Shown in pieces: positions 1,782-59,922 of a stretch of DNA of 64,000 nt. The notes under the pieces are model-generated. The model ran no database searches. It had not been told where the DNA came from and was given only the letters and a program-made list of their open reading frames with translations. Positions within the stretch are counted from its first letter, which is position 1, and each line of letters opens with the position of its first letter. The position numbers were made by a program, and so were the translations under genes. The stretch is taken from the IMG/VR virus record IMGVR_UViG_3300022868_000009, positions 186,001-250,000 of that record. One strand, 5' to 3'.

Positions 1782-2972
1782 TTAAATTAAATTTCTCAAA
1801 TGATAATTGAAAACTAACTTAACCTCTTCTGAATATTTTTTTGGATATACTACAGAATCATGAATAGTAAAGATCTTAATGTGTGGATATTTCTTTGCAA
1901 TATCGCTCACAACCTTACCATAAATAAAATCACTTTCCATTCTCTGCAATTTATGACTCAACGATTTATAAGTATCGTCTAAACTTTTTAATTCTTTTAT
2001 ATACTCTAAAACACTCGGGTATAATTCACCAAAAATGTTATTTTCTCTGTTTCCATTATTATTTCCAAATAAAACCTTAAACATCATCAACTTAGCATCA
2101 GTCCTTGTTTTAAGTTCAAGTGGAAATCTTTCAGTAAATTCATCATATATTAAACCATTTTTAACAATATCAATAAATCTTATAACTTCTTCATTTAATT
2201 CATCTATCTCTTGTTTTAAATATAAACCAAAAAAGAAAGGTTGTGAATTTTTAATATCAACTTCATCAACAGGCTCACCATCAATCTTCAAAAATCTATT
2301 TCTAATTTCTTTTTTAAGTATCGTAAAATTAGTGTGCATTCTACCATAACCATCAAATTTAAAAAATATATTGCCTGTTTGTATTCCATCGACACTATTA
2401 TGATTACGTAAATATTTACTATTCTCCATTTCACCATTTTCCCATAAATCATCAATATAATCTATCGACTTTTGATAATCTATCTGTACATAATATAAAT
2501 AATCAATTAATTTCTTTCTAATTTCAATATCTATTGGACTATTAACATAGGTTGTAAATGATCTCTCTAAATAATCCTTTTGATATTTTTTCATTAAGAT
2601 TTTATCATCAACCACACATTTAGTTATTTCTAAGTCTGTTATATTTAATTTATATGTTTTGGCTTTTTTTGAAACATAATAATTAGAGACCAAAGTCATA
2701 AATCTTTTTTCAATTAAATAATTAATATAATAATTATAATATTTTCCATATTTATTTCTTAATAATACAGACCATAAATTAAATTTAACTTCATTAGTAA
2801 AAAAATATTTTATTACTAACTCATGAATTATATTTATTAAGTAATCTGTTTTTAAATTAATACCATTATATGGTATCTTCTTTATTCCAGTTAAATATTC
2901 ATATTCTTTTGGAATAAATTGATATAAATATTGTCTATCTTTTGGTAAAATTATATTTGTTTTATGGAACAT
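1782..2972 (-). CDS. Minimal family-A (PolA/T7 RNAP-fold) polymerase-like protein
   Basis: GRMHT, motif A-like DIKNSQP, motif B-like RTDAKLMMFKVLFG, LQRMES and motif C TIHDS; no exonuclease domain. Confidence 0.7.
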   Translation of the reverse strand: MFHKTNIILPKDRQYLYQFIPKEYEYLTGIKKIPYNGINLKTDYLINIIHELVIKYFFTNEVKFNLWSVLLRNKYGKYYNYYINYLIEKRFMTLVSNYYVSKKAKTYKLNITDLEITKCVVDDKILMKKYQKDYLERSFTTYVNSPIDIEIRKKLIDYLYYVQIDYQKSIDYIDDLWENGEMENSKYLRNHNSVDGIQTGNIFFKFDGYGRMHTNFTILKKEIRNRFLKIDGEPVDEVDIKNSQPFFFGLYLKQEIDELNEEVIRFIDIVKNGLIYDEFTERFPLELKTRTDAKLMMFKVLFGNNNGNRENNIFGELYPSVLEYIKELKSLDDTYKSLSHKLQRMESDFIYGKVVSDIAKKYPHIKIFTIHDSVVYPKKYSEEVKLVFNYHLRNLI

Positions 2973-3167
2973 TAATGAAATTATTTTTTCTTTTGAATTT
3001 AAATTATTATTTTAGAAAAGTTTATGGTTAAATTCTTAAGATGCATCAAAAGCTATTTCCACATGAAACGAAGATTTGGTGCAAAATTATGATAGTATTC
3101 TAATTAATTAATTTTTTTCTTTAAGAAAATTTTCTTATTTTAGAAGAACATTAAAACGAAAAAAATT

Positions 3168-3758
3168 ATGGATGAAAATATAAAAAAATCATTAGAATCT
3201 TTAAGTAAATCTATTTGTTCAAAACTTGTAGATAAAAATATAAATTTAGATGAATTAATTTCTAATCATTTATCAACTATTAAATTGCTTTATCCTGATG
3301 TTGAAAATTTAGAAAAAATATTTACTGATATTGTTCTTAAAGAATCAAAAAAGTATTATGAATCAAAGAAATTTAAAGTAAGATGTATAAAAACACATAA
3401 TACATTTTCACATAAATATAATAGAGGTTCAATTTATACTGTAATTGATGAATTTAAACAAGTTGGTATACATAATAATGATGATGAAGAACATTATTAT
3501 AAAATTAAAGATGATAATAATAAAATTGTATTAGTTGAGCCAAATCATTTTATTAAAATTGAAGATGAAGAAAGTTTAGCAGATATGAAAATAGAATATG
3601 TAGATGATGAATTAATAATTTCTACTTATGATGGACAAGCATTAAAAATAGAAAGAAAAAATATTGATATTTTTTTAAGAGAATTACATAAATATTCTTC
3701 ATCGTATATTAAAAATGATAAATTAGAAAAAACTTTAATATTTTTTGAAAGTAAATAA
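3168..3758 (+). CDS. Hypothetical protein
   Basis: 196-aa ORF after early-type promoter at ~3135. Confidence 0.6.
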   Translation: MDENIKKSLESLSKSICSKLVDKNINLDELISNHLSTIKLLYPDVENLEKIFTDIVLKESKKYYESKKFKVRCIKTHNTFSHKYNRGSIYTVIDEFKQVGIHNNDDEEHYYKIKDDNNKIVLVEPNHFIKIEDEESLADMKIEYVDDELIISTYDGQALKIERKNIDIFLRELHKYSSSYIKNDKLEKTLIFFESK

Positions 3759-5125: not shown

Positions 5126-5497
5126 TTATCCAGCTCTACCAGGTTTGTGAAGAGTAGTGAAACGTTTCCATTGACTTATGAAATCAGGTTTACTATTAGT
5201 TTTAGCTATTTCCGATTCTTTCTTGTTCTTTTCTCTTTCTCTTCTATTTCTCTCAATGGTTGATTTAGTATCAGATTTTTCTTTTTTATCAATTTTTTCA
5301 TCTTCTTCATCAAGTAAATCTATATCATCTTCATGAAGATCAACTACACCAGCATCACTAACTGTATCTTTACTAGGAGCACCAGTTTGACCTGCACCAA
5401 ACCAATTAGAATTACCATCTAATCTATTATTTGCAGTATTAGATTGATCTAATGGAACATTATGTTGCCATTCTAAATAAAATTTTAAATGTTTCAA
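5126..5497 (-). CDS. Putative internal virion protein (MKHLKFYLE tag)
   Basis: TTG start, TATATA motif at 5516-5525, tag motif. Confidence 0.6.
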   Translation of the reverse strand: MKHLKFYLEWQHNVPLDQSNTANNRLDGNSNWFGAGQTGAPSKDTVSDAGVVDLHEDDIDLLDEEDEKIDKKEKSDTKSTIERNRREREKNKKESEIAKTNSKPDFISQWKRFTTLHKPGRAG

Positions 5498-5560
5498 AAC
5501 TATTTTAATTTTAACTTATATATAAAAAACACACAAAGGAAATTTAAAAATTATTAATTT

Positions 5561-5785
5561 ATGAGTATATTTATTGTTACTTATTTAAGTAAATCAAAAA
5601 AACCTCAAACGAAAAAATTTACAACATCAGCTAATTCTAGTGATGATGCGTCTTTTAATTTTAGAAAATCTGGAATTAAATATTTAAAAGTTTTCAACAT
5701 TAAAGAATCAACATCAAACTGTTTAGGGAATATTTTTCCTGATTTACAAAATCTTAAAGATAAATTAGAAAATGAAGAAAATTAA
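5561..5785 (+). CDS. Hypothetical protein
   Basis: ORF overlapping next gene. Confidence 0.55.
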   Translation: MSIFIVTYLSKSKKPQTKKFTTSANSSDDASFNFRKSGIKYLKVFNIKESTSNCLGNIFPDLQNLKDKLENEEN

Positions 5786-6065
5786 AATCAATTTTACATT
5801 AATAATAGCAATATTAAACACATTTGCTTTTATAATTAATCCACTATCTATTATAGGTCTAGTAAATTTATTTTTTGCAATTTACTTCATAAGAAGCGTT
5901 TATAAACATTATAGGAAAAAATATGTGGAAAAAATTACTATTAAAAAGAAAAAAGAAGAAGAATTTGTGAAAAATTTTAGAAATTCAATAAAAAAACACA
6001 AAAAATTCGAAAAAGAATATGATTATATCAAAATTGATAAATCACCCGTTGAATTTAGAAATTAA
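5772..6065 (+). CDS. Small membrane protein
   Basis: Two N-terminal hydrophobic segments, basic tail. Confidence 0.55.
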   Translation: MKKIKINFTLIIAILNTFAFIINPLSIIGLVNLFFAIYFIRSVYKHYRKKYVEKITIKKKKEEEFVKNFRNSIKKHKKFEKEYDYIKIDKSPVEFRN

Positions 6066-6968
6066 TTTAGTAACTAATTTACTTCCTGAATTTGTCAAAC
6101 TAAATAACTTATTATCATTTTGATCTATTAATCCACGGTGATATAATTCAATTATATTATTAACTAATTCTTTAAAATCTAATTTATGTAAATATAAATC
6201 ATTTTTTAAAAATGATATTTTTCTAGGTTTAATATATAGTTTATATAATATTGCAAATTCTAATTTTGTCACCTTATTTGAACTATACACAAATCTTTCA
6301 TATAGAAATTCTACATGAAATTCTTCATTATTTCTAAATATTTTCATTATTAAATTGTCGAATTTATTTTTAATCTTATTAAAAATATCAGTTCCATAAT
6401 ATTTTAAACCAACTAAAGTAGCACCAACTCCAGTTAAGGTTACAGATTTTAAAAATTCTACTAAATTTATATCATTTATATTTACATCTACTAAAACACT
6501 AATAAAAGGTACTAATAAAATAGAATAAATAAATAAATCTCTTATTCCTTTTATAACTTTACCAAAATTACTAGCTAATATAGAAAATAATTTTTTTACA
6601 TTTTTTATAACATCAATAATCATTTTTAACAATTCATCTAAGCCTTTTTCATTAATAATTAATTTTGCTTTATGAATAGAATTTTTATTTTCTTTTAATA
6701 AAATTGCTAAAGCTGTTATTGTTAATAAAATAATATCAAAAACTCTTAATTCATATCCTGTATTCTTAATAATACTCTCAATAAAAGGGTAAAAAGCAGT
6801 AACGGATGTACCAAAAGTGGCTATGAAATAATAATTTAAACCTATTTCTTTAATTACATTTTTTTGTTCTTTTTGCCAAGTTGAAATTTCTCTTTTTTCA
6901 AATAATTTATACAGAATCTCACTTTCATTATCTTCATTATAACTTTTATAAGAATTAATATGTTTCAT
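6042..6968 (-). CDS. Multi-pass membrane protein with virion-tag N-terminus (MKHINSYKSYNE)
   Basis: About 4 hydrophobic helices; TAATATATAG just upstream. Confidence 0.65.
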   Translation of the reverse strand: MKHINSYKSYNEDNESEILYKLFEKREISTWQKEQKNVIKEIGLNYYFIATFGTSVTAFYPFIESIIKNTGYELRVFDIILLTITALAILLKENKNSIHKAKLIINEKGLDELLKMIIDVIKNVKKLFSILASNFGKVIKGIRDLFIYSILLVPFISVLVDVNINDINLVEFLKSVTLTGVGATLVGLKYYGTDIFNKIKNKFDNLIMKIFRNNEEFHVEFLYERFVYSSNKVTKLEFAILYKLYIKPRKISFLKNDLYLHKLDFKELVNNIIELYHRGLIDQNDNKLFSLTNSGSKLVTKLISKFNG

Positions 6969-7076
6969 AATATCTATATATTATTTTTTTATTTATAAAA
7001 AATTTTCTATATTGAATTAGGAAAATAAAGAAAAAAGGAAAAATTCAACCTTATTTAAATTTAAAAATATAATTAG

Positions 7077-7931
7077 ATGGCAGAAAAATTCAATTTTACT
7101 AAAACATATGATAAAGATAATATTTTTAACACATTAAACAATTTAAAAATATATCAACAAGGCAACTATATTATCACCAATTATAAAGGTAGACCTATCA
7201 GTGAAACAAAGGTGACAAATAAATATCAAATTTTTGACTTTTCTTCATTTGCAAAAGAAATTGTTGGGGAAGTTGAAAATTATTTTACCCCAGAAACATA
7301 TAAACTAAGAATAAGAAAAGGTATTCAAGAACTCAGATTAATTGGCGAAGAAGTTTATATAAACGGTGAACAATATCATAAAATGTTAAATATTTTAAAC
7401 TCAACAGATAAATCAAGAGCATTACAATTAAATATTGGTCTTATTAGATTTATTTGTACAAATGGTGTAATTGCGGCAGTTGAAGACGAATATACAGGTT
7501 TTAAAAATAAACACTATAAATCATCATTGCCTGGTGCTGTTGAAGATTTTATGAAAAACCTTAACAAATTCAATATTATACTTGATAAACAATCAACTAT
7601 AATTGAAAGTTTATCAACAAATATAATTTCATTACAAGAATTAGCTGCAAAGTTAACTTTAGATGAACATGGTGTTATCAAAGAAAACAGACTTCTTAAA
7701 TTGAAATCTTTTACTAAAAAATTATTAACTTCAAAAACAGATAAATTAAATATTAAACTGTTAAACGAAGAACAAATTAAACTATTAAATTATCCTGAAA
7801 TATTTCAATCTACGAAAGTTGATATCGAAATACCAGCTTATCAAGCGTTTAATAACTATACAGAATTATTCAGAGAATATGATAGTTCAGTAATTAAAAG
7901 AGAAACAAATAGAATATTAGAATTAGTATAA
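7077..7931 (+). CDS. DUF932/DUF945-like protein
   Basis: NS.D.S and RFICTNG motifs typical of this family. Confidence 0.65.
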   Translation: MAEKFNFTKTYDKDNIFNTLNNLKIYQQGNYIITNYKGRPISETKVTNKYQIFDFSSFAKEIVGEVENYFTPETYKLRIRKGIQELRLIGEEVYINGEQYHKMLNILNSTDKSRALQLNIGLIRFICTNGVIAAVEDEYTGFKNKHYKSSLPGAVEDFMKNLNKFNIILDKQSTIIESLSTNIISLQELAAKLTLDEHGVIKENRLLKLKSFTKKLLTSKTDKLNIKLLNEEQIKLLNYPEIFQSTKVDIEIPAYQAFNNYTELFREYDSSVIKRETNRILELV

Positions 7932-8072
7932 AGAATTTTTGAAAAAATTTGTATTATTTTCAACTTTTAAATATATTTATAATATATAATAGAATGTTTT
8001 TTAACAAAAAAGAATTATAAAAAATATCATTAATTTTGTTATTGGCATTGTAACTAAAAAACAAAAAGTTTT

Positions 8073-8669
8073 ATGGGAAAAAATAAACATGAAGTCAAAT
8101 TCAAAGAAGCAACTGGACAAGAATTTTCTAAATTTTATCAAGATCAAATGCCTAGATTAACTTGGCATCTTTCAAATTATACAAAAGATTTTGAAGTAGC
8201 AGAAGATTTTGCAAATGACGCATTTGAACAAGCCTTAAAAAAAATTGAAACTTATGATAAAAATAAGTCTCAAATTCAAACTTGGTTATACACAATTGCT
8301 AGACACATTGTTATTCAATCTTGGAATAAAAAGCAAAAAATGCCATCCGTCTCAATTGATAAAGAATATGACGTAAACCTTTCATTAAGTACTTTTTTAC
8401 CTTATGAAGATGGAAAAGAAGATTTAGAAAAGTATAATACTTATGTTGAAAAGGCTAAGATTATAAAAGAAGTTATTAAAAATCTTCCTCCTAAATACAA
8501 AGAAGTCATGGAATTAAGAGAATTAGATAATATGCAATATAAGGAAATTGCGAAGTATCTTAAGAGAAACGAATCTACTGTTAAATCTCAAATTCGAAAA
8601 GGACGTGAATTAATAAGAGATAAAGTGCAGAAAAAATTCGATTACATTGATAAACATGGACTGGAATAA
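8073..8669 (+). CDS. ECF-type RNA polymerase sigma factor
   Basis: Region 2 AEDFANDAF...TWLYTIARH; region 4 LPPKYKEVMELR...YKEIAKYL...STVKSQIRKGR. Confidence 0.9.
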   Translation: MGKNKHEVKFKEATGQEFSKFYQDQMPRLTWHLSNYTKDFEVAEDFANDAFEQALKKIETYDKNKSQIQTWLYTIARHIVIQSWNKKQKMPSVSIDKEYDVNLSLSTFLPYEDGKEDLEKYNTYVEKAKIIKEVIKNLPPKYKEVMELRELDNMQYKEIAKYLKRNESTVKSQIRKGRELIRDKVQKKFDYIDKHGLE

Positions 8670-8678
8670 CCCAATATT

Positions 8679-8706
8679 AAAGAGCCTTGTTTTTACAAGG
8701 CTCTTT
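8679..8706 (+). terminator. Intrinsic terminator
   Basis: AAAGAGCCTTGT-TTTT-ACAAGGCTCTTT perfect 12-bp stem after sigma gene. Confidence 0.85.
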
Positions 8707-8738
8707 CTACTTAAACTTATTAATAAAATTAACATATA

Positions 8739-8948
8739 ATGAGTAATATTTCGAAAGAAAATAAAAAATTAGCTAAAAACTGGTTTATAAAAAACATTGA
8801 TAAATATAATCTATCAACTTGGGATGATGAAGATGATTCATACAAATTATTTGAAGATCTACATAAAGATACAAGCATTAATTATGAAGATAAATTATAT
8901 TATAGAGAAGTTTTTACATTAGCCATGAAAATAAAAGATGAAATATAG
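8739..8948 (+). CDS. Hypothetical protein
   Basis: ORF in overlapping gene run. Confidence 0.55.
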   Translation: MSNISKENKKLAKNWFIKNIDKYNLSTWDDEDDSYKLFEDLHKDTSINYEDKLYYREVFTLAMKIKDEI

Positions 8949-9273
8949 AGTTTTTAAAGAAAGTATAGGATGGAGTGAAGGTTTATTTATATTTCCATTT
9001 GAAATTAAATTTAGTGAAATTAGTAATTTTCCACAAACACATTTTATATGTAAAGATAATTATTTAGGAGAATTTACATTTGATTTAAAATTTTTAAAAA
9101 TTTTAAATCAAGGTAAAATTAATGATAAAACTTTTTGGTTTGAATATTTGTTCGAACATGATTCAGATGATTCAATTAAAAACAAAAAAGAACCTTTAAT
9201 GAGAGAAGAACCTAAAATTGTCCCTAAAATAGTTCCTAAAAAGCAATTACCTGAAAATGAAAGTCTATTTTAA
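8938..9273 (+). CDS. Hypothetical protein
   Basis: ORF, TAATG coupling to next gene. Confidence 0.6.
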   Translation: MKYRVFKESIGWSEGLFIFPFEIKFSEISNFPQTHFICKDNYLGEFTFDLKFLKILNQGKINDKTFWFEYLFEHDSDDSIKNKKEPLMREEPKIVPKIVPKKQLPENESLF

Positions 9274-9614
9274 TGTGTAAAGTTGTTCATTTTAAAAAAG
9301 ACAATTATGATATTTATATTGGTCGTTTACCTAATGATGAATATAATAAATGGTCTTATCCAAAATGTTTATCTGAACAAATGTCAGGTGTTACAAGAAT
9401 AGAGAAAATAAATGCTTATGAATATTATTTAATTAATAATGAAGAATTGATGAATAATTTACATGAACTTAAATATAAAACTTTAGGATGTTGGTGTAAA
9501 GACAAAGGAGGCGGAGGTAAAAAATGTCATGGAGACATAATTAAAAAATACGTAGATAAATTAGAACTTAAAGATAAACAAAAAAATCTTAATTATAATG
9601 ATTGGGATTTTTAA
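9273..9614 (+). CDS. DUF4326-family protein
   Basis: YDIYIGR ... LGCWC ... CHGD motifs. Confidence 0.8.
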   Translation: MCKVVHFKKDNYDIYIGRLPNDEYNKWSYPKCLSEQMSGVTRIEKINAYEYYLINNEELMNNLHELKYKTLGCWCKDKGGGGKKCHGDIIKKYVDKLELKDKQKNLNYNDWDF

Positions 9615-9692
9615 AGAAAAATGATTTGGAATTGATTTTTTTTAACAAAAAAATTTAGTATTTTAGTAATAGGTAAAAAAAAAGAATGATAT

Positions 9693-10085
9693 GTGATGAA
9701 CAAAGATAAAATAATACCTACTCACAATGGTTTAGAAAGAATAAGAACATATACAATAGAAGAAGTTTTTAAATGGATTGACGATAATCCAAGAAAAACA
9801 TACTGGGAAGACGGAGAATATAGGATTAAAATGACACGAGCAAAAATTTTTAAAAAGAAAGGATTAATTTGCTCTATATGTGGGCTCGAAGGACTCTATT
9901 TTATATTAGAAAAAGATAAAGGCGGTGGTATACACTTAGATTTATATGGTTTAGAAAATGAAGTTGAAATATTACTCACAGTTGACCACATAATTCCTAA
10001 ATCTAAAGGTGGTATAAATAATATAATAAATTATCAAACCATGTGTAAATATTGTAATGAATTAAAATCAGATGATAACTTTTAA
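9693..10085 (+). CDS. HNH endonuclease
   Basis: CSIC ... TVDHIIPKSKGG...NYQTMCKYCNELK. Confidence 0.85.
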   Translation: MMNKDKIIPTHNGLERIRTYTIEEVFKWIDDNPRKTYWEDGEYRIKMTRAKIFKKKGLICSICGLEGLYFILEKDKGGGIHLDLYGLENEVEILLTVDHIIPKSKGGINNIINYQTMCKYCNELKSDDNF

Positions 10086-22252: not shown

Positions 22253-23089
22253 ATGAAACTAAAATCCTTTATGCCAACAATTTGTCCGGAATGCGAAAGT
22301 AAACTCGTTATTGAAGAAGGTAAAAAAGAGGATGTAATTAGACTTATGTGCAAAAATCCTAAATGTAAAGGAACTGCTATTAAGAAATTACAAAAAGGTA
22401 TCAAAGCTTTAGAAATAAGAAATTTAGGACCCTCCACAATAAAAAAACTTTATTTATCAGGGATTGAAAATAGTTTTGATTTATTTAATCCAGAAATATT
22501 TAACGAAGAAAATCTTTGTAATGGATACTTTAAAGAAGGAAGAGCATTAGAAAAAATAATGGATTCAGTTGATAATGTTGAATCAATTGCAATTGAAAAA
22601 GCCATTCTATCACTTCAAATAATGGTTGAAAAAGAAGAAGGTGAAGGTTTTATATCTATTGGTGAATCTTTATCAGAACAAATTGGTAGAATGATGTCAG
22701 GTGTTGATTTTGATTATGATGGTTTAAGTATTCAAGTAAGAGAAGAAGTACAAAACGAAAAGAGTCCACTTTATCTTAAAATTAAAAGTGCTCTCCAAGA
22801 ATTTGAAAATAATGATATTGAAATAGATAAATTTAAAAAAGTTGAACCATTAGATTTATCAAAACTTAAAAAAGTTAAAAAACAAGTAACACTTATTGGC
22901 GAACCAACAACTATTGATATGACAACAGAAGAATTCTTAAACAAATTAGAATGGGGTGTTGTAGATATTAAAAATAGTGATATGTTAATCGTTGAAAATA
23001 AAAATATAGAAAACGAAATTGTTGAATACGCAAAAGACGAAGGTATTAAGATAATGACATTTAAACAAATTAAATTATTATTTCTATAA
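22253..23089 (+). CDS. NAD-dependent DNA ligase C-terminal-like protein (Zn finger, HhH, BRCT-like), no adenylation domain
   Basis: CPECES...CKNPKC; IRNLGPSTIKKL; C-terminal AKDEGIKIMT. Confidence 0.7.
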   Translation: MKLKSFMPTICPECESKLVIEEGKKEDVIRLMCKNPKCKGTAIKKLQKGIKALEIRNLGPSTIKKLYLSGIENSFDLFNPEIFNEENLCNGYFKEGRALEKIMDSVDNVESIAIEKAILSLQIMVEKEEGEGFISIGESLSEQIGRMMSGVDFDYDGLSIQVREEVQNEKSPLYLKIKSALQEFENNDIEIDKFKKVEPLDLSKLKKVKKQVTLIGEPTTIDMTTEEFLNKLEWGVVDIKNSDMLIVENKNIENEIVEYAKDEGIKIMTFKQIKLLFL

Positions 23090-23376: not shown

Positions 23377-23628
23377 ATGGCAAAAGTAATTGAAATGACA
23401 GGCAGCCCTAAATCAGCGGGTTTTAAAACAAAATCTACTTTTTTAGAAAAATTAGCAGAATTTGGATTTACACAATCTAAAATGAAAAAGAAAGATAACC
23501 CAGTAGATATATTAGTAACAAATGATCCTGGATCTACAACATCTAAAATGACACTTGCCAATGAATTAGGTGTTGAAATTATGACTTATGAAGATCTTAA
23601 AGATTCATTCAATTTAGAGGTAGATTAA
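23377..23628 (+). CDS. Stand-alone BRCT domain protein
   Basis: MTGSP...ILVTND....SKMTLANELGVEIMTY. Confidence 0.75.
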   Translation: MAKVIEMTGSPKSAGFKTKSTFLEKLAEFGFTQSKMKKKDNPVDILVTNDPGSTTSKMTLANELGVEIMTYEDLKDSFNLEVD

Positions 23629-23671: not shown

Positions 23672-24121
23672 TTAATTGTATTTCGTTCTTCGATTTACTT
23701 TTTGAGTTATTTCAAAAAGTAAATCAAGAATATAATTGTCACATTCTTCATTTTTCGTTTCTTCTATTGGAACTGGATTTTCGAAATTTGGATTTTTTTC
23801 CGCTCTTTTTTGATCATCTCTAAACCATTGATCTTCATTAATATAATATTCAAATCTCAAACCATTATCTAAAATAATAATTATCATATCATTTTTACTT
23901 TCACTAGAATCAGATGAATTACTAAGTCTAACATCTTTAATTTTACCACCAGGTAAAGTTTGTAAAACTTTCCCAATATATTCACTAAAATCTAGATCAG
24001 ATCTATTATTTCTTTGAAATTCTGATTTCCAGTCATCAAATTCATGTCTATCATCTTGATTTAAAGAACCATAAATATCTTTAAGTTTATTAAAATTCTC
24101 GAATTTTTTTAAGTATTTCAT
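23672..24121 (-). CDS. Putative internal virion protein (MKYLKKFENF tag)
   Basis: Tag plus late motif. Confidence 0.65.
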   Translation of the reverse strand: MKYLKKFENFNKLKDIYGSLNQDDRHEFDDWKSEFQRNNRSDLDFSEYIGKVLQTLPGGKIKDVRLSNSSDSSESKNDMIIIILDNGLRFEYYINEDQWFRDDQKRAEKNPNFENPVPIEETKNEECDNYILDLLFEITQKVNRRTKYN

Positions 24122-24468
24122 AATCGTTTTTTTTTTTTGTGGTTATTGATATTATATATATTATTAAGTTGAAATATTTTTAGAGAAATTTTTTACAAAT
24201 GGTATATAAATTTCTCTATAAGGTGACTCATTTTTAATTTGAGGGTGTTTATTAACTAGTTTTTTTAACCTATTTAATTGTTCATCTATATCATCTATTT
24301 TAGTAATATCATCTAACATTTCTTCTAAATCTTTTATTTCTAATTTATAAAGACCAAGTTGATCGCTTACTGATTTCCAATCTTTATCATTATTGAATGT
24401 ATCATTCCATTCGTTGAATTTTCTTAAGTATTTCATAATCTTTTTTTTGGGTTATTGATATTATATAT
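24101..24468 (-). repeat. Duplicated ~55-bp promoter/leader/tag cassette (24101-24159 and 24416-24468)
   Basis: TATATAATATCAATAACC..A-run..GATTATGAAATACTTA(A/G)AAAATTC on minus strand in both copies. Confidence 0.85.
24164..24436 (-). CDS. Putative internal virion protein (MKYLRKFNE tag)
   Basis: Tag plus late motif. Confidence 0.65.
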   Translation of the reverse strand: MKYLRKFNEWNDTFNNDKDWKSVSDQLGLYKLEIKDLEEMLDDITKIDDIDEQLNRLKKLVNKHPQIKNESPYREIYIPFVKNFSKNIST

Positions 24469-24503
24469 CAACAAAAAAAAATGGTTTTTAACAAGATTGA
24501 AGA

Positions 24504-24931: not shown

Positions 24932-25876
24932 TTAAAAATCTGATGCATTTAATAATGTGTATTGATAAATACCACCTTCCAATTTAGTTCGATATTTTTC
25001 ACATAAAGACATAAATCTTTGAAAATCAGACCAATAATGTATTACTTGACAACCTGCAGACCATGATTTAACACCACTCCCTGGTGATGATTTTTCGGTA
25101 CCTACCTTAGTAGAATGTATATTAATACCTCCACCTTCACTACTATTAATATTATAATGAAAAGTTCCGTTTTTTGTAGGATCTCTATGAACTGGTAAAT
25201 TATAAGTAGGGTTCAACGCTCTATATCTAGCAGAATTAGTTTGTTTATGATATCCAAGTTTATATGTAAATTGTCCCTCTTTTAAAATTGAACAACCTTT
25301 AGAATTTAATAATTTTTTAAGGTAATAAACTCCAGGTTTTGTAGTACATTCAAATTCTTCAACAATATCATCATATACAACTAGCATAGTATCATTCCAA
25401 TTATTCGGTTTATCAGCGTTTCTAACTCCTATTAATTGAAAAGGTTCAATCCATTTGTATTTTTTTAGTTTAAAAATTCGTTTAAGTTGACTAACCGTAA
25501 TATTTGAAGGTTTTGGTGTTGTGTTTGCTGGATTAGAACTACCATTATTTGAAGTTGATATATTTGTTTGACCACCTTGACCTATTGATGAATCTAATTG
25601 TTTAGTAGGTGTATAAGTTCCCCATTCAGGGTTATTATATATAACATCTGATTCTCCAAAAGTATCTCCATCTACATACGGATCATAACTATCATCATCG
25701 GCATTAATATTACTAGAATATTGATTCATTTCAGAATAAGTAAACTCATTTGCGTCACCATATGAACCAGAATCTTCAAAATCATCAACACCACTATAAG
25801 GATCATATTCTTCTTTTATCACAGTCTCCTGTTTTTGTGTTATTGGCTTTGTTTCATCATATTTAGGTATAGCCAT
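24932..25876 (-). CDS. Baseplate-linked putative peptidoglycan enzyme (YkuD/L,D-transpeptidase-like C-terminal domain)
   Basis: CTTKPG ... GINIH ... WSAGCQVI His/Cys signature; low-complexity N-half; coupled to gp5-like gene. Confidence 0.65.
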   Translation of the reverse strand: MAIPKYDETKPITQKQETVIKEEYDPYSGVDDFEDSGSYGDANEFTYSEMNQYSSNINADDDSYDPYVDGDTFGESDVIYNNPEWGTYTPTKQLDSSIGQGGQTNISTSNNGSSNPANTTPKPSNITVSQLKRIFKLKKYKWIEPFQLIGVRNADKPNNWNDTMLVVYDDIVEEFECTTKPGVYYLKKLLNSKGCSILKEGQFTYKLGYHKQTNSARYRALNPTYNLPVHRDPTKNGTFHYNINSSEGGGINIHSTKVGTEKSSPGSGVKSWSAGCQVIHYWSDFQRFMSLCEKYRTKLEGGIYQYTLLNASDF

Positions 25877-27039
25877 TATTTATATCTTATAAATTTTTTA
25901 GTTTTCTTATCAAAAATTGCAATTTTTCCATCTTCTGTTTCTCTATATATAATATCCTTTTTAGTACCAGAAGTTGGTATCGTTTTTATTATTTTAGGTT
26001 CTAAACCACTTGATTTTTTAACATTTAATTTCTTAAAATCTTTATATTGTGCGTATTCAGATTCATCTGTTTCAATTGTCTCACCATCAACAACTTTAAT
26101 ATATGTTATATATTCAGTTCCGTCTTCGTTTTGACTAACAAAAGGAGCGTCATCTATAATAAATTTTGATGGTTGTGATTCTACTTCTTTATCTACAGCC
26201 TTTTCTCTTTCTTCATTAACTTTTTCTTTAAAATCTTTTGAAACATATTCAGATTTTAAAAGTTTTTTAGGTTTTGGTTCATTAAATTTATCAGTTAAAT
26301 CAATTGTAAGATCATCATCATCTTTAATAACAGACGTTTCAGGTGATCTTTTCAATTTCTTAATTTTATTATCATCATTCAAGAAAACATTATCAGAAAC
26401 AAAAGTTTCTCTGATTACTTTATATTCCATTAACAACATATCTAACTCTGGTCTAATAATAGGGGCCGCTAAATTTCCTGTTAATGTTGTAGGAACCAAT
26501 AATTTATTGATAAATTTATCCATCCACGCAAAAAAATTAGTTCCTAAAACAGCTTCTTGATCTGCAGTTTTATCACCTAAATTTATTTTCTGTGAATTAT
26601 CTTTTAATTCAATATTAATAGAATTATTATCTATTCTAATTTTATTATATTTATGATCTATTATAAATTCATCACCATTTGTATATACCTGAGAAGTTTC
26701 ATCAAATAATAAAGCCACAAAATTCAAATAATCATCTTCACTTAAACTCTTTAATTTTCTTTCAAGATTTATATTGTAATTCTCACTATAAATATAATGA
26801 GGATCATATATATCATCATTTAGAAAAATAACATTCACTATTTTACCAATAGCAGGAACCTCAAAAGATTTTCCAGCTAACCCCCTATATGGGGAAGAAT
26901 ATGGCAAATCTTCCATTGGTATAGTATCAAAAACACCTTGTACCCTAACTTTAAGTCTACCTTTTCTATTAGGATCTTTATTATCTTCTACAATACCTAC
27001 AAATATTTTATCTCTAATATCAACATTAATTTGTTGCAT
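25876..27039 (-). CDS. Baseplate hub/spike protein with gp5 OB-fold
   Basis: GIVEDNKDPNRKGRLKVRV...VPAIGKIVNVIF. Confidence 0.8.
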   Translation of the reverse strand: MQQINVDIRDKIFVGIVEDNKDPNRKGRLKVRVQGVFDTIPMEDLPYSSPYRGLAGKSFEVPAIGKIVNVIFLNDDIYDPHYIYSENYNINLERKLKSLSEDDYLNFVALLFDETSQVYTNGDEFIIDHKYNKIRIDNNSINIELKDNSQKINLGDKTADQEAVLGTNFFAWMDKFINKLLVPTTLTGNLAAPIIRPELDMLLMEYKVIRETFVSDNVFLNDDNKIKKLKRSPETSVIKDDDDLTIDLTDKFNEPKPKKLLKSEYVSKDFKEKVNEEREKAVDKEVESQPSKFIIDDAPFVSQNEDGTEYITYIKVVDGETIETDESEYAQYKDFKKLNVKKSSGLEPKIIKTIPTSGTKKDIIYRETEDGKIAIFDKKTKKFIRYK

Positions 27040-44181: not shown

Positions 44182-44703
44182 TTAAATTTCTTGACTACCT
44201 TGTTGTAACTGTTGACCTTGTTGTTGTAATTTCTGGCCTTGTTGTTGTAATTGCTGCCCTTGTGTTTGTAGATTTTGACCTTGTGCTTGTAAACCATCAT
44301 CCTGTGCAGGAATATCCTGTGCAGTTTGTTGAGCTTGAGTTTCATCTGGAACATCTTGTAATGGTTGAACTTGTTGCGTTTGAGCTTGTTGCATTTGAGG
44401 TTGAACTTGTGCACCTTTTGCATAATTAGAACCCATTGCCATTGTAACAGGCAAATTCTCAATGTTCATATATGATGAAGCGATATAGTTAACAATCATT
44501 TCAGCCATTTGTTCTGCACCATAAAGATCTTTAACATCTCTACCTGTCTCATCTTTAACTTTTTTAGTAAAAGCGTTAATTAATGATTTAGGTACATCAA
44601 CGTTTGGTAATACTCTATAAACATCATCAATAGCAAATACAGTTTCTTGAACTTTATTTCCTTTTGAATTTTTAAAATCATTTAGATTTGTTAAATGTTT
44701 CAT
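44182..44703 (-). CDS. Putative virion protein with Q-rich tail (MKHLTNLNDF)
   Basis: TTAATATATA upstream; QGQ heptad repeats. Confidence 0.7.
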   Translation of the reverse strand: MKHLTNLNDFKNSKGNKVQETVFAIDDVYRVLPNVDVPKSLINAFTKKVKDETGRDVKDLYGAEQMAEMIVNYIASSYMNIENLPVTMAMGSNYAKGAQVQPQMQQAQTQQVQPLQDVPDETQAQQTAQDIPAQDDGLQAQGQNLQTQGQQLQQQGQKLQQQGQQLQQGSQEI

Positions 44704-48991: not shown

Positions 48992-49966
48992 ATGAAAATA
49001 TATAAATTTAATTCTTTTATATTTGAAAAAAGTTCTCTAACTTCAATTGGAATACCAAATGAAGTTCTTAAACAAATTCAAATAGATTACGAATTACCAC
49101 ATAATATAAAATGGGAAGAACTTACATTTTCAAACACCATCAAATCATCACTAGAAAATGATGACAAAAATCTATATATTGAAATAAATAAAGAAGGCAC
49201 TAAAGTAAACGTAATAACATCAATAAGAAAAAATAAAAAGAAAATCTACATATTAGACGAATATAAATATAATTTCGGATGGGAAAAATCAGAAAGAATT
49301 GATATAACATTCGCACCAATTGTACAAAAAATGTCATTTAAAAGTATATATTATCACTGTGAATCTAAAAACTTTAAACTCACATCCAAAAAAGAAAGAT
49401 CACTTGAAAATATAAATGTCCAATATGAAAATTTTAATACACAATTTAAAAAAGACTTTACTAACAAATTCATAAGTATAATTAAAAAAGATAAATATAA
49501 TCTACTAGACAATACTATAAAAGAAAACGGTCTAACAACATTTGATGAATATTTATATGATTTTGAATCACAATGTTCAGAAGAATTAAAAAGATATTTA
49601 ACAATTAAAGAACTTATTTCTAGATATGGTAAAGATAAAATATTTAGATCATTTATGTATTTCATTAAAACAAATAACTTAAAATTATTTGAATCAAATA
49701 CTTCATTAAAACAAACAATAAGTTTATTCGTTGACGATTATTGGTATGCAATGGACGAATTAGAAGGAGTATTACATGACTTAGGATATAAAAGAATGAG
49801 TGATAGTGGTAAAGATGTTCTTTTTGTAGAAAAAGAAGGCGAAACTAGATTATATTGGTACGGAAAAGCTTTTGAAATTAAAAATGAACCACATTATAAA
49901 ATGCCAGAAGACTGGGCAACTTTTGTTAAAGAAATAACACAAAATTTTGAAGATATAAAAATATGA
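48992..49966 (+). CDS. Putative virion protein (MKIYKFNSFIFE tag; internal LKLFES)
   Basis: Start revised; TTAATATATAG a few nt upstream. Confidence 0.65.
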   Translation: MKIYKFNSFIFEKSSLTSIGIPNEVLKQIQIDYELPHNIKWEELTFSNTIKSSLENDDKNLYIEINKEGTKVNVITSIRKNKKKIYILDEYKYNFGWEKSERIDITFAPIVQKMSFKSIYYHCESKNFKLTSKKERSLENINVQYENFNTQFKKDFTNKFISIIKKDKYNLLDNTIKENGLTTFDEYLYDFESQCSEELKRYLTIKELISRYGKDKIFRSFMYFIKTNNLKLFESNTSLKQTISLFVDDYWYAMDELEGVLHDLGYKRMSDSGKDVLFVEKEGETRLYWYGKAFEIKNEPHYKMPEDWATFVKEITQNFEDIKI

Positions 49967-50175
49967 AACATATAAAAACTTTTGAACAACATGCTGCAGA
50001 TTATTATGAAGGAGAAACTTCATCTTCACCTTCAGGACCAGTTAAAATGAACTGTCCTAATTGTGGTAATGAAATGAATGTAATGTTCCATGAAATTAGT
50101 CCAAAACCAATCACTTGTGAATTTTGTGGTGATAAAATAGAATATCCATATGGTCAAAGTTGGCGTTGGGCATAA
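49963..50175 (+). CDS. Zinc-ribbon protein with virion tag (MKHIKTFE)
   Basis: CPNC...CEFC. Confidence 0.7.
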   Translation: MKHIKTFEQHAADYYEGETSSSPSGPVKMNCPNCGNEMNVMFHEISPKPITCEFCGDKIEYPYGQSWRWA

Positions 50176-50176
50176 T

Positions 50177-50662
50177 ATGAAACATTTAAAAACATATAAT
50201 GAAAAATTTTCTTTTAGGAAAGATGATCAAAGAGAAATTAGAAAATGGCTTTTTAATTATATATGTAATGAATATTTTGGCGAAAAACAAGAATCATTAA
50301 AAAAATATGATAGAAAAATTCGTTTTTCACCAGGTTCTAATGGTAACGATATATATAAAATATATAAAATATTTAATGATAATAGATATAGATTTGACAT
50401 TATATGTGAACTAACAGACGAAGAAATTAAAGATGATATCTATCTCAGTGCAAGTATTGTAAAATTCAAAGATATGTATGATATCTCACTTAGACAGACA
50501 TACAATGAAACAGAAAAACAAATAGAAATTAAAGGTATTGCTTTTGAAGTAAGAGCAATATTAAAAAAGGGAATGGACAAATCAAAATTTAAATCTGAAT
50601 TATCTGATAAATTAAGAGAAACTGTTGAACATGAATTCAGCATTATGACTCATTATTTATGA
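50177..50662 (+). CDS. Putative virion protein (MKHLKTYNE tag)
   Basis: Start revised to ATG 50177. Confidence 0.65.
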   Translation: MKHLKTYNEKFSFRKDDQREIRKWLFNYICNEYFGEKQESLKKYDRKIRFSPGSNGNDIYKIYKIFNDNRYRFDIICELTDEEIKDDIYLSASIVKFKDMYDISLRQTYNETEKQIEIKGIAFEVRAILKKGMDKSKFKSELSDKLRETVEHEFSIMTHYL

Positions 50663-55874: not shown

Positions 55875-56108
55875 ATGAAATATTTAAAGACATACGAAGA
55901 ATTAACCGATTCACAAAAAGAATCTGAATATAATAAAAAATTAGAAGAACTAGAAGATAAAAAAGAAAGACTTCAGAAAAAACTCCAATATTCAGAAGAT
56001 GTAAGAGATCCAGAAAAAACAGAACAAATAAGAAAAGAAAAGAAAGAAGAAATTGAAAAGAATAAAAAGAAAAAGAGTTCTGAAGATCAAAACTCTTTTG
56101 TATCCTAA
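55875..56108 (+). CDS. Putative internal virion protein (MKYLKTYEE tag)
   Basis: TTAATATATA upstream; charged coiled coil. Confidence 0.65.
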   Translation: MKYLKTYEELTDSQKESEYNKKLEELEDKKERLQKKLQYSEDVRDPEKTEQIRKEKKEEIEKNKKKKSSEDQNSFVS

Positions 56109-58808: not shown

Positions 58809-59500
58809 TATCTAAATGTTTTATAAAATTTACCTAAATTGTTCTTCTTATATATTAATTCTTTTTCTCTTCTATCTAATTCTTCTAAAAATTCTTCATC
58901 ATTAGAAACACCAAAATCTTTATAATGTTTCTCTCTAGAAGGCGCGGATGTCGTATAACTACCGTAAGTCGCAATTGAGTCTGGTTTTGTAGTTTCAGGT
59001 AAATTTCTTTTTATAATTAACCCAGCCATTCTATTATCAATTTGATTAATTATTGGATCTTTTAAATGTTTAACAATTTTCTTATTATTTTTAGTTTCTG
59101 GATAAAATGCAATAAATTCATCAAAAACGCCAATATCAAAAAGTCTACTTTTATTACTAGATTTAGTACTCGTTATTCCTTCACTATATTCATAATCTGC
59201 AATTAAAGGAAATATATCATTAATATCTTTTGATTTTGAATTCATAAAATCATATAGAGGTTGTATGGCTTTTTTATAAGCTTTTTGATTTTCTTCTTCT
59301 ATACCAACTTTATTTCTTTCATACCAATTCGTACTCAAAGATCTCCATTTATCCTTGATCTTATCATATCCTTGATAAGTACTATAATCTTTTTTAAGTT
59401 TTTGAAGACTTTTTAATACAACATCATCATCAACAATATTTTCAATTTCTTCCAATCTAATTTCAAGATCTTCAAGATCATTACTACAATATATTTTCAT
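58808..59500 (-). CDS. Hypothetical protein
   Basis: Coupled ORF. Confidence 0.6.
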   Translation of the reverse strand: MKIYCSNDLEDLEIRLEEIENIVDDDVVLKSLQKLKKDYSTYQGYDKIKDKWRSLSTNWYERNKVGIEEENQKAYKKAIQPLYDFMNSKSKDINDIFPLIADYEYSEGITSTKSSNKSRLFDIGVFDEFIAFYPETKNNKKIVKHLKDPIINQIDNRMAGLIIKRNLPETTKPDSIATYGSYTTSAPSREKHYKDFGVSNDEEFLEELDRREKELIYKKNNLGKFYKTFR

Positions 59501-59922
59501 TAAAATAAACCTAATTTATTTGATTCAGTTGAATATTTGTATTGTGGATATTTATCCAAAAACTCATCTAATTCAAAATTGTTTTTTGTTTTAGTTTTTT
59601 GTAAAATTTCATTAAGACTATCTTCAACACTAACACCTAAAACTTCGAAATCTTTGTAGATACCAGTTGATAGTTTATTCTTATATTCAGAATTAGGATT
59701 ATAAGATATATAACCTTTATTTTCAGAAGGTTTAAAATTCTTTTTATCATTAACAAAATCTAACCATTCTATATTAAATTTTTCATCACCATTATAAATA
59801 TCACAAAAAATAGTGTAAATAATTTTCAATTTATCAGGTTTAATATTATATAATGTTAAATCGTTCCCTGTATAATCAAGATTAATGTTTTCAAACATTT
59901 TATATAAAACTAAATATTTCAT
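59500..59922 (-). CDS. Putative virion protein (MKYLVLYKMFE tag)
   Basis: AAATATATA just upstream. Confidence 0.6.
   Translation of the reverse strand: MKYLVLYKMFENINLDYTGNDLTLYNIKPDKLKIIYTIFCDIYNGDEKFNIEWLDFVNDKKNFKPSENKGYISYNPNSEYKNKLSTGIYKDFEVLGVSVEDSLNEILQKTKTKNNFELDEFLDKYPQYKYSTESNKLGLF

What the first reader, a model, noticed from the sequence alone, without database searches (positions are those of the whole stretch)
24101..24468. Duplicated promoter + leader + tag cassette fused to two unrelated payloads
Seen: two adjacent genes share about 55 bp covering TATATA, the 5' leader and the first 7-8 codons (MKYL(K/R)KF), then diverge completely. Inference: a snapshot of how new cargo proteins arise, with a portable 'express late and package' cassette recombined onto new ORFs.
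Basis: seen in the sequence. Interest (0 to 1): 0.6.

Follow-up and report, generated by a model that had tools for sequence, protein, structure and literature searches.

The report
N-terminal address tag on phage genes
Two neighbouring genes of a huge salt-lake phage share a promoter, leader and first seven codons, and that ten-residue start (MKYLKTYNE-like) also heads about 44 otherwise unrelated small proteins in the same genome, so it looks like a portable address label, perhaps for loading proteins into the phage head.

Summary
On the minus strand, gene A (24164-24436, 90 aa) and gene B (23672-24121, 149 aa) are each preceded by the same about 55-60 nt. It consists of an ATATATAA box inside an identical 18-mer, an A-run, GATT, and ATG AAA TAC TTA ARA AAA TTC. 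Past codon 7 their similarity is at chance level.

The window lies in a 344.6 kb fragment of a huge T4-like phage (25% GC, salt lakes). In that fragment about 44 of 493 genes begin M-[KR]-[YH]-[LI]-K-T-[YF]-[EN]-[ED]. Their bodies are unrelated (an LRR protein, a DUF6934 protein, many ORFans).

Synonymous codon variation shows that selection acts on the peptide. A confident structure model leaves the tag as a free tail. 37 of the 44 genes sit in transcription units headed by the promoter box that also precedes the capsid and protease-scaffold genes; none sits behind the host-type promoter. Other phage contigs carry the tag; cellular genomes essentially do not.

My best reading (about 0.4) is a capsid-targeting tag like that of the T4 internal proteins, greatly expanded, with the focal pair a recent local copy of promoter, leader and tag. 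Packaging itself is untested.

The parts
24450..24468 (-). Copy A of the promoter-like box (ATATATAA, 24461-24468) inside the shared 18-mer TATATAATATCAATAACC (24450-24467)
   Evidence: The same box type lies upstream of the MCP, protease-scaffold and baseplate operon genes.
24437..24449 (-). Copy A of the 5' leader: A-run plus GATT, with no Shine-Dalgarno sequence and no stable fold
   Evidence: The RNA fold z-score is -0.88. A one-base deletion at 24473, just upstream of the copy A promoter box, occurs in other salt-lake runs.
24416..24436 (-). Tag codons 1-7 of gene A (MKYLRKF)
24164..24436 (-). Gene A, 90 aa. It carries the N-terminal tag on an ORFan payload predicted to be all-helical at low confidence.
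   Evidence: The only match in the word-index search of 5.8 billion proteins is the protein itself. AlphaFold2 from the single sequence gives pLDDT 57.6.
24141..24162 (-). Copy B of the promoter-like box (AATATATA, 24155-24162) plus the shared 18-mer (24141-24158)
24122..24140 (-). Copy B of the leader: a longer A-run plus CGATT
   Evidence: The fold z-score is 0.10. A one-base length polymorphism occurs at 24127.
24101..24121 (-). Tag codons 1-7 of gene B (MKYLKKF)
23672..24121 (-). Gene B, 149 aa, with the N-terminal tag. It has one homologue among 1.84 billion representative proteins (P0006, 126 aa), which is also tagged (MKNLKNFKQF).
23692..23725 (-). Strong hairpin (perfect 14-bp inverted repeat; 16-pair stem in the RNA fold) inside the last codons of gene B, at the end of the minus-strand unit. 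It may be a terminator or a stabiliser.
   Evidence: Inverted repeat I20. The fold z-score is -4.7.
6042..6968 (-). Another tagged gene in the window (308 aa, MKHINSYKSY), with the late-type box 14 nt upstream
44182..44703 (-). Tag-variant gene (173 aa, MKHLTNLNDF) with the late-type box and a ...CCGATT leader like the focal pair
49963..50175 (+). Tagged gene (70 aa, MKHIKTFEQH)
50177..50662 (+). Tagged reading frame (161 aa, MKHLKTYNEK), starting at an internal ATG of the listed 170-aa ORF
55875..56108 (+). Tagged gene (77 aa, MKYLKTYEEL) behind a late-type box
59500..59922 (-). Tagged gene (140 aa, MKYLVLYKMF) that also ends with the C-terminal motif ...SNKLGLF

Best explanation
The roughly 10-residue start M-[KR]-[YH]-[LI]-K-T-[YF]-[EN]-[ED]-x is a portable N-terminal peptide tag. 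This T4-like huge phage attaches it to many unrelated, late-expressed small proteins.

[quoted passage not shown] In that model an exposed N-terminal peptide, with key hydrophobic or aromatic residues at positions 4 and 7, docks the protein to the scaffolding core while the prohead assembles. The protein is then enclosed in the head and delivered with the DNA. The Glu at position 8 or 9 may serve as a cleavage site for the gp21-like prohead protease.

The focal pair is a recent local DNA-level copy of one late promoter, its A-rich leader and the tag, now standing in front of two unrelated bodies. This shows that the tag spreads by DNA duplication or recombination with a break right after the tag.

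Shown here: the repeat itself; the genome-wide tag; unrelated payloads; selection at the peptide level; a free N-terminal tail in one confident model; association with the promoter type that precedes the structural genes; and T4-like head genes in the same genome.

Inferred: that the promoter is late; that the tag binds the scaffold; that tagged proteins are packaged, cleaved and injected; and that recombination at the tag creates new cargo genes.
For: 1. The repeat is real and ends sharply at codon 7.

2. The tag is frequent and strictly N-terminal. 31 genes match a strict pattern and 44 of 493 score above 4 on a position matrix, while the best of 1653 internal Met sites scores 1.4.

3. The payloads are unrelated. 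With the first 12 residues removed, no pair among the 31 reaches BLASTP E <= 0.01. Payloads include an LRR protein (PF12799, 8e-17) and a DUF6934 protein (4e-7).

4. Selection acts on the peptide. Leu4 is encoded by TTA 17, CTT 7 and TTG 1, and the tag shows L/I, Y/F and Y/H exchanges.

5. Position 4 is L or I in 44 of 44 tags and position 7 is aromatic in 43 of 44. Glu occurs at position 8 or 9 in 80% of tags against 14% of other genes. In T4, targeting depends mainly on CTS residues 4 and 7 and processing on residues 8 and 10 (PMC9026906). The T4 CTS is MKTYQEFIAE (bioRxiv 10.1101/2021.01.19.427310).

6. An AlphaFold2 model of a tagged LRR protein has mean pLDDT 91.7, but residues 1-6 fall below 50, so the tag is a free tail.

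7. The box AATATATA(A/G) is 8-fold enriched upstream of genes. It precedes the MCP, the protease-scaffold and the baseplate operons. 37 of 44 tagged genes lie in units headed by it and none behind the host-type box. This was replicated in contig G004, where 23 of 24 tagged genes lie in such units (p = 4e-6).

8. The head module is T4-like: a Gp23-family MCP (PF07068, 85.5 bits), a maturation protease (phrog_207, 1e-29) and a portal (phrog_213). Three tagged genes lie directly downstream of it.

9. The tag is conserved in other phage contigs (58 matches in five contigs, none for the reversed-pattern control). It has only 2 matches in 596 Gb of cellular genomes.

10. Homologous payloads in other contigs keep the tag while the body has diverged to 30-38% identity.

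11. A second adjacent pair, G000 336852 and 337353, shares an identical 26-nt leader plus tag on unrelated bodies.
Against: - There are no virion proteome, expression or binding data.
- The tag is not similar in sequence to the T4 CTS beyond M1, K2 and an aromatic residue at position 7.
- It lacks the I-A-E site that this phage's own scaffold repeats about 12 times as YSEYIAE. The Glu sits at position 8 in some tags and 9 in others, so a fixed P3-P1 cleavage geometry is not evident.
- Tagged proteins are mostly acidic (median pI 5.8), whereas the T4 internal proteins are highly basic.
- 44 or more cargo species in half a genome would be far more than the handful of CTS-bearing proteins described for T4.
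- The promoter box also heads units that contain 57% of untagged genes, so it may be a general phage promoter rather than a strictly late one.
- Contig G002, which carries the tag, shows only a weak MCP match and no scaffold homologue.
Confidence: 0.4

Rival explanations
1. The tag is a short linear motif for some other shared partner, not for head packaging. Candidates are a phage chaperone or adaptor, a timed degradation signal, or sorting to another virion part or cell location. The focal genes lie next to the baseplate hub, so tail or baseplate loading is one such option.
For: The tag is a free N-terminal tail, is selected at the peptide level and sits on unrelated bodies. It does not resemble the T4 CTS or the phage's own YSEYIAE scaffold sites. 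It co-occurs with a second, C-terminal motif (15 of 31 tagged genes, p = 2e-7), which hints at a wider addressing system. The focal pair sits at the end of the baseplate module.
Against: No candidate partner was found. ClpP, an S41 tail-specific protease and a T4-type clamp were not detected in the fragment. The strong link with the structural-gene promoter type and the residue 4/7 pattern fit packaging at least as well.
Confidence: 0.3
2. The conserved start is an RNA element: a translation-initiation enhancer or the operator of a translational repressor acting on a set of late mRNAs, in the manner of T4 RegA. The peptide would be a by-product.
For: The tag is strictly at the start codon and all tagged genes belong to one promoter class. 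The leaders lack a Shine-Dalgarno sequence and are unstructured. Thr6 uses ACA in 18 of 20 cases against 54% genome-wide.
Against: Leu4 switches between TTA and CTT (two base changes) at roughly genome-wide codon frequencies. Conservative amino-acid swaps (L/I, Y/F) are tolerated, and the bases just upstream of the ATG are not conserved between most tagged genes. Structural late genes lack the tag.
Confidence: 0.1
3. The tagged genes are one old, fast-evolving paralogous family in which only the N-terminus stays recognisable. On this view the focal pair is an old tandem duplication.
For: Many of the genes are small, lie in arrays and have no database relatives. A few sub-families of true paralogues exist.
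Against: Bodies belong to different known families (LRR and DUF6934) and range from 57 to 513 aa. In the focal pair the non-coding 18-mer is 100% identical while the coding sequence after codon 7 is at chance similarity; this is the reverse of what old divergence would leave. The tag sits at different distances from the homologous core in gene B and in P0006.
Confidence: 0.1
4. The match is a chance or compositional effect of a 25% GC genome.
For: AT-rich codons favour K, Y, L and N.
Against: 0 of 100 shuffles reproduce the pair. The reversed-pattern control has 0 matches against 58 real ones in five contigs. Internal Met sites never score like the tag.
Confidence: 0.01

Closest known systems
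[quoted passage not shown]
   Same: Both are peptides of about 10 residues at the extreme N-terminus, starting MK, that are shared by proteins with unrelated mature parts. Positions 4 and 7 are the key positions in both. The phage has gp23-, gp21- and gp20-type head genes. The T-even internal proteins are likewise described as a highly diverse set that shares only the conserved CTS (PMC3012670; PMC9026906).
   Different: The sequence differs (MKYLKTYNE against MKTYQEFIAE) and there is no I-A-E cleavage site. About 44 genes in half a genome carry it, against a handful in T4. The payloads are mostly acidic rather than basic. Half of them also carry a C-terminal motif. Packaging and cleavage are not shown.
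PeSL mobile regulatory cassettes of T4-type phages (Arbiol et al. 2010, PMC2839356; PMC4122927)
   Same: Both are short conserved cassettes that include a promoter, are repeated next to variable ORFan genes, and are thought to drive modular shuffling by recombination.
   Different: PeSLs are intergenic, carry a sigma-70-like early promoter and include a terminator stem-loop. The focal cassette carries the structural-gene type box, has no stem-loop and extends into the first 7 codons. The full cassette has only two copies plus one partial copy.
Conserved N-terminal propeptides of giant-phage head proteins (SPN3US gp53 and gp54; phiKZ relatives)
   Same: Diverged head proteins keep an identical N-terminal stretch: 15 residues in gp53 and gp54, which are only 34% identical overall. 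That stretch is thought to target them into the prohead and to be removed by the prohead protease (PMC5694885).
   Different: Those proteins are true paralogues, their propeptides are mostly longer than 100 residues, and their cleavage motif is A/S/G-x-E. Here the bodies are unrelated and the tag is 10 residues long.

Membership tests
T4-type capsid targeting sequence (CTS) proteins | A short peptide (about 10 aa) at the extreme N-terminus, shared by proteins whose remaining sequence is unrelated | tested here: met
   44 of 493 genes carry it, and no similarity remains once the tag is removed. The focal pair aligns over residues 1-11 only.
T4-type capsid targeting sequence (CTS) proteins | The genome has a T4-like head assembly set: a gp23-like MCP, a gp21-like prohead protease, a scaffold and a gp20-like portal | tested here: met
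   PF07068 scores 85.5 bits. Matches to phrog_207 (1e-29), phrog_213 (1e-64) and phrog_138 were found. PF03420 scores only 23.5 bits, below its cut-off.
T4-type capsid targeting sequence (CTS) proteins | Targeting depends on hydrophobic or aromatic residues at positions 4 and 7 | tested here: met
   Position 4 is L or I in 44 of 44 tags and position 7 is Y, F or W in 43 of 44. The T4 rule comes from PMC9026906. This is a parallel in conservation pattern, not a functional test.
T4-type capsid targeting sequence (CTS) proteins | The tag ends in a gp21-type cleavage site (L/I-x-E) | tested here: inconclusive
   Glu occurs at position 8 or 9 in 80% of tags, but the P3 residue is hydrophobic only when Glu is at position 9. 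The phage's own scaffold sites read Y-I-A-E.
T4-type capsid targeting sequence (CTS) proteins | Sequence similarity to MKTYQEFIAE | tested here: not met
   Only M1, K2 and the aromatic residue at position 7 are shared.
T4-type capsid targeting sequence (CTS) proteins | Expression at the time of prohead assembly (late) | tested here: inconclusive
   37 of 44 tagged genes lie in units headed by the box that precedes the MCP and protease-scaffold genes, and this was replicated in G004. No RNA data exist.
T4-type capsid targeting sequence (CTS) proteins | The protein is present in the virion, the tag is removed and the protein is injected | not testable with these tools
   This needs virion mass spectrometry or fusion experiments.
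PeSL mobile regulatory cassettes | An intergenic cassette made of a sigma-70-like early promoter plus a terminator stem-loop | tested here: not met
   The box is of the structural-gene type. The leaders do not fold (z-scores -0.88 and 0.10). The repeat runs into the coding sequence.
PeSL mobile regulatory cassettes | Gene gain, loss or replacement between close relatives at the cassette borders | tested here: not met
   Near-identical contigs and salt-lake runs show the same gene order. Only the distant phage LR756501 has another payload at the matching site.
Tandem full-length paralogues | Similarity along the whole proteins | tested here: not met
RegA-type translational operator (RNA element) | Conservation of bases, including synonymous sites and bases upstream of AUG | tested here: not met
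   Synonymous and conservative changes occur within the tag, and the upstream sequence varies.

The most novel reading that the evidence does not exclude
This clade of huge phages runs a two-signal addressing system on a very large set of small effector-like proteins. A C-terminal motif, (E)(A/G/S)xK(L/M)GLL-COOH, marks about 12% of genes. The N-terminal tag is added to those versions that are made late and pre-loaded into the head, so that dozens of different proteins enter the host together with the DNA. New cargo arises when the short tag (with or without its promoter) is copied in front of another ORF.
Probability: 0.25. Interest if true: 0.85.

Novelty: new variant of a known kind. Interest (0 to 1): 0.68.

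Why it matters
If the tag is a packaging signal, a single sequence rule would name the injected protein cargo of a whole clade of uncultured 300-700 kb phages. That would be dozens of proteins per genome, most of them without relatives and probably aimed at host take-over or defence. It would also give a natural short tag for loading foreign proteins into very large capsids.

If the tag is not a packaging signal, it is still a short linear motif on about 9% of a phage's genes, with an unknown reader that would be worth finding. The focal pair, and a second pair like it, show at DNA level how such a tag moves to new genes.

Tried and rejected
- Complex prediction of the scaffold repeat region (residues 290-455 of the 811-aa protease-scaffold) with the tagged LRR protein gave no answer: score 0.00, and the controls were not run. 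It counts neither for nor against binding.
- The ESM Atlas holds gene B only as a poor model (pLDDT 0.46) with no usable look-alikes. AlphaFold2 of gene A from a single sequence was poor (pLDDT 57.6).
- Word-index protein searches for gene A, gene B and the DUF6934 payload returned only the queries themselves. Pfam and PHROGs gave nothing for the focal genes or for 10 motif-bearing proteins.
- I looked for payload variation at the locus. The search for related loci and the look-up of encoding contigs returned only near-identical contigs. Contigs from four other salt-lake or marine runs showed the same arrangement, with one-base changes in A-run length. One 'joint' had only 21-nt sides and I judged it unreliable.
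- The tag is not a genome-wide feature of the 735 kb phage LR756501: the strict pattern has 0 matches, and a loose pattern has 2 against 2 for the control.
- I considered another genetic code because two tRNAs with anticodon CTA are present. I rejected it for this fragment: TAG ends 44 of 493 ORFs and read-through adds few codons.
- The C-terminal motif is not a ribosome-binding site for the next gene. Only 24 of 59 such genes are followed closely by another gene, the same share as for other genes.
- ClpP, an S41 protease and a T4-type clamp, as possible readers of the C-terminal motif, were not found in the fragment. The clamp search also rang in no control genome, so it says little.
- No paper holds the tag strings.

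Full report
**What is there.** The window is G000:C1:186001-250000 of a 344,634-bp virus record with 25% GC. CheckV estimates it at about 48% complete. Its only DNA relative among deposited phages is the 735-kb uncultured phage LR756501/LR756503, matched over part of the baseplate hub gene. Runs that hold the sequence are salt-lake metagenomes and one marine metagenome; no RNA run holds it.

Around the finding, a minus-strand block encodes several large proteins without matches, then a gp5-like baseplate hub (25876-27039; PF04717, phrog_430). Next comes a 314-aa protein with a phrog_3000/endolysin-like C-terminal half (24932-25876) and a 134-aa protein. The block ends with gene A (24164-24436, 90 aa) and gene B (23672-24121, 149 aa). 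It converges on plus-strand genes that look like pieces of an NAD-dependent DNA ligase.

**The observation.** Read on the minus strand, both genes are preceded by TATATAATATCAATAACC, which is identical over 18 nt. An A-run follows (8 against 12 or more bases, with small differences at its start), then GATT, then ATG AAA TAC TTA A(G/A)A AAA TTC.
- The 18-mer and the 21-nt start each occur exactly twice in the window, and shuffles do not reproduce this.
- After codon 7 nothing is shared. BLASTP aligns residues 1-11 only.
- Local DNA and protein alignments of the remainder score at the mean of shuffled controls.
- A profile of gene B plus its one homologue matches gene A over 11 columns only.

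**The larger pattern.** I laid out the whole record and called ORFs crudely, giving 493 genes at 90% coding.
- 31 genes begin MK[YHF][LI]xx[YF].
- With a position matrix, 44 genes score above 4, while the best of 1653 internal Met sites scores 1.4.
- The consensus is M-[KR]-[YH]-[LI]-K-T-[YF]-[EN]-[ED]-[FN]. Position 4 is L or I in 44 of 44 and position 7 is aromatic in 43 of 44. Glu is at position 8 or 9 in 80% of tags, against 14% of other genes.
- With the first 12 residues removed, no two of the 31 proteins reach BLASTP E <= 0.01.
- The bodies include an LRR protein (PF12799, 8e-17) and a DUF6934 protein (4e-7). Lengths run from 57 to 513 aa.

Inside the tag, Leu4 is TTA 17 times, CTT 7 times and TTG once. 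Tyr and Lys use both of their codons. L/I, Y/F and Y/H exchange freely. What is kept is therefore the peptide, not the bases. The sequence upstream of the ATG differs between most tagged genes.

An AlphaFold2 model of the tagged LRR protein, built on six homologues, is confident (pLDDT 91.7) except for residues 1-6, which fall below 50. The tag is a free tail there.

**Distribution.** The coding pattern has 27 matching stretches in IMG/VR. Five further contigs carry 3 to 20 copies each of MK[YH]LKx[YF] at ORF starts, with no match to the reversed control pattern. All cellular genomes searched (596 Gb) gave 2 matches. One of them is in a contig of exactly the same length as an IMG/VR viral contig.

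Homologous payloads in other contigs keep the tag while the body diverges.
- Gene B's only relative among 1.84 billion representatives is P0006 (38% identity). It starts MKNLKNFKQF, and its tag lies 28 residues closer to the conserved core.
- G000 21254 and G004 161060 are about 30% identical and both are tagged.

LR756501 does not use the tag genome-wide. At the matching place, after its hub and peptidase-like genes, it nevertheless has tttttAATATATAGttac-ATG followed by MSFVKTYEEWKF on a 262-aa protein. That protein is unrelated to genes A and B and to the 134-aa protein.

**Promoters.** The octamers AATATATA and ATATATAA are 8-fold enriched in the 70 nt upstream of genes (91 genes each). 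The box lies 18-22 nt before the ATG of the Gp23-type capsid gene, the protease-scaffold gene, the heads of the baseplate operons, and both focal genes, and it is followed by an A-rich leader. The plus-strand block of replication-type genes in the window almost entirely lacks it.

A second class, TTTTT...CGTATATTTG, resembles, from memory, the Bacteroidota TAnnTTTG -7 box. It heads arrays of small genes at 313-342 kb.

When I assign genes to units by walking upstream, 37 of 44 tagged genes fall in units headed by the first box and none behind the second. For untagged genes that carry only the C-terminal motif the figure is 7 of 42 (p = 3e-10), and for the remaining genes it is 233 of 407. The link with the first box repeats in G004 (23 of 24, p = 4e-6) and weakly in G002 (12 of 16, p = 0.07).

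'Late' is an inference from the genes the box precedes and from its likeness to the T4 late promoter, which I recall as TATAAATA. No transcript data exist.

**Head genes.** G000 1-12 kb holds a T4-type head module.
- It contains a portal (phrog_213) and an 811-aa protein whose first 200 residues match the head maturation protease (phrog_207, 1e-29). PF03420 scores 23.5 bits for that protein, below its cut-off.
- It contains a Gp23-family capsid protein (PF07068, 85.5 bits).
- HNH homing endonucleases are interleaved among these genes.
- Three tagged genes follow directly on the same strand.

The long C-terminal part of the protease protein carries about 12 tandem 14-residue units, YSEYIAExLDKNI. 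G005 has the same arrangement. The heptad Y-S-E-Y-I-A-E is close to the T4 CTS core Y-Q-E-F-I-A-E and holds the T4 gp21 site type I-x-E.

This suggests that the protease specificity is T4-like. It also shows that the tag studied here is not a copy of that motif.

**Mechanism.** The nearest known system is the T4 CTS.
- The first 10 residues of IPIII are enough to load foreign proteins into the head.
- Residues 4 and 7 matter for targeting, and residues 8 and 10 for cleavage.
- The T-even internal proteins are a diverse set that shares only the CTS.

The tag here shares the position, the length, the MK start, the 4/7 pattern, a following Glu, the T4-like head machinery, the structural-gene promoter class and the unrelated payloads. 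It differs in sequence, in the number of genes, in payload charge (median pI 5.8) and in having no clear fixed cleavage geometry. I put about 0.4 on a CTS-like packaging tag and about 0.3 on another peptide-reading partner. The RNA-element and old-paralogy readings get about 0.1 each. The rest, including chance, is small.

**The focal pair.** Identity of a non-coding 18-mer that no other promoter in the genome shares, next to coding sequence with no similarity, is the reverse of what old divergence leaves. It points to a recent copy of about 55 nt, or to replacement of the body downstream of the tag.

A third gene, G000 264106-264471 (MKHLKKFENL), shares the A-run, CGATT and the tag, but not the 18-mer. 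A second adjacent pair, G000 336852 and 337353, shares a 26-nt leader plus the tag on an LRR body and an unrelated body.

I found no polymorphism in gene content at the locus. The recombination step is therefore inferred, not seen.

**Limits.** Gene calls are my own crude ORF calls. The record is about half a genome. Promoter classes are motif-based. All functional statements about the tag are inference.

Noticed in passing
G000 genome-wide, densest at 299-343 kb (outside the window); in the window, 59500-59922 (-): About 59 of 493 genes end with the same C-terminal motif, (E)(A/G/S)xK(L/M)G(L/I)(L/M/F/Y)-stop. Most are about 100 aa and have unrelated bodies: 51 of 75 motif-bearing proteins are singletons once trimmed. 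15 of the 31 N-tagged genes carry it too (p = 2e-7). It is not explained as a ribosome-binding site for the next gene. In the LRR model it forms two helices followed by a short tail. It loosely recalls a clamp-binding pentapeptide (from memory), but no reader was found. Contig G004 has it on 30 genes; G002 has essentially none.
   Followed up: partly
G000 5467-7902 (-), locus L007; also L076 10497-12893 (-): The head maturation protease is fused to a long C-terminal part that holds about 12 tandem 14-aa repeats, YSEYIAExLDKNI. The heptad is close to the T4 capsid targeting sequence core (YQEFIAE) and holds an I-x-E site. It is probably a scaffold with many cleavage sites, and it hints that the T4 CTS imitates a scaffold repeat.
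   Followed up: partly
L012 12614-12688 (+) and L014 629-701 (+) (G000 about 112.6 kb and 140.6 kb): Two tRNAs with anticodon CTA (amber suppressors) are among 34 tRNA genes. Yet TAG ends 44 of 493 ORFs and read-through adds little, so this fragment shows no sign of recoding.
   Followed up: yes
G000 313-342 kb (L020, L021): A second promoter-like class, TTTTT...(C/T)CGTATATTTG(T/A), often sits just after a GC-rich hairpin. It heads arrays of small plus-strand genes and resembles the Bacteroidota -7 box TAnnTTTG (from memory). This suggests a Bacteroidota host and early transcription by the host polymerase.
   Followed up: partly
G000 1788-3440 (-), 8010-9752 (+) and five more copies (93117, 95580, 100168, 130817, 181954): Seven paralogous HNH homing endonuclease genes (phrog_3339, up to 1e-128) are present. 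Two of them are wedged between the portal, protease and capsid genes.
   Followed up: no
window 22253-23089 (+) and 23377-23628 (+): Two separate ORFs (278 and 83 aa) both match the C-terminal part (Zn finger to BRCT) of NAD-dependent DNA ligase, and no adenylation domain lies next to them. They may be a split or duplicated ligase tail. A 23-nt direct repeat lies at 23463 and 23529.
   Followed up: no
window 23692-23725: A strong hairpin (perfect 14-bp inverted repeat; 16-pair stem in the RNA fold; z = -4.7) lies inside the last 20 codons of gene B, where the minus-strand unit meets the plus-strand genes. It may be a terminator or an RNA end protector.
   Followed up: partly
L021 11852-12780 (G000 336852-337780, minus strand): This is a second adjacent gene pair with an identical 26-nt leader (tgtaagtcaataaaattataaaatag) plus the tag on unrelated bodies (LRR 159 aa and a 127-aa protein). 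It shows the same phenomenon as the focal pair.
   Followed up: partly
L072 7038-7857 (LR756501.1, about 642.9-643.8 kb): In the 735-kb phage, the site after the hub and peptidase-like genes carries the same AATATATAG box and a tag-like start (MSFVKTYEEWKF) on an unrelated 262-aa protein. A clamp-loader-like AAA+ gene follows.
   Followed up: partly
window 24127 and 24473: One-base deletions occur in the A-run of the gene B leader (24127) and in the A-run just upstream of the gene A promoter box (24473), in contigs from another salt-lake run.
   Followed up: no
L052-L061 (G002, 193,754 bp, 92% complete): A smaller, distantly related phage (48 shared proteins) uses a longer form of the tag, MKH(L/I)K(L/I)YEQ(Y/F)DFED, on about a dozen small proteins in tandem arrays. 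It lacks the C-terminal motif.
   Followed up: partly
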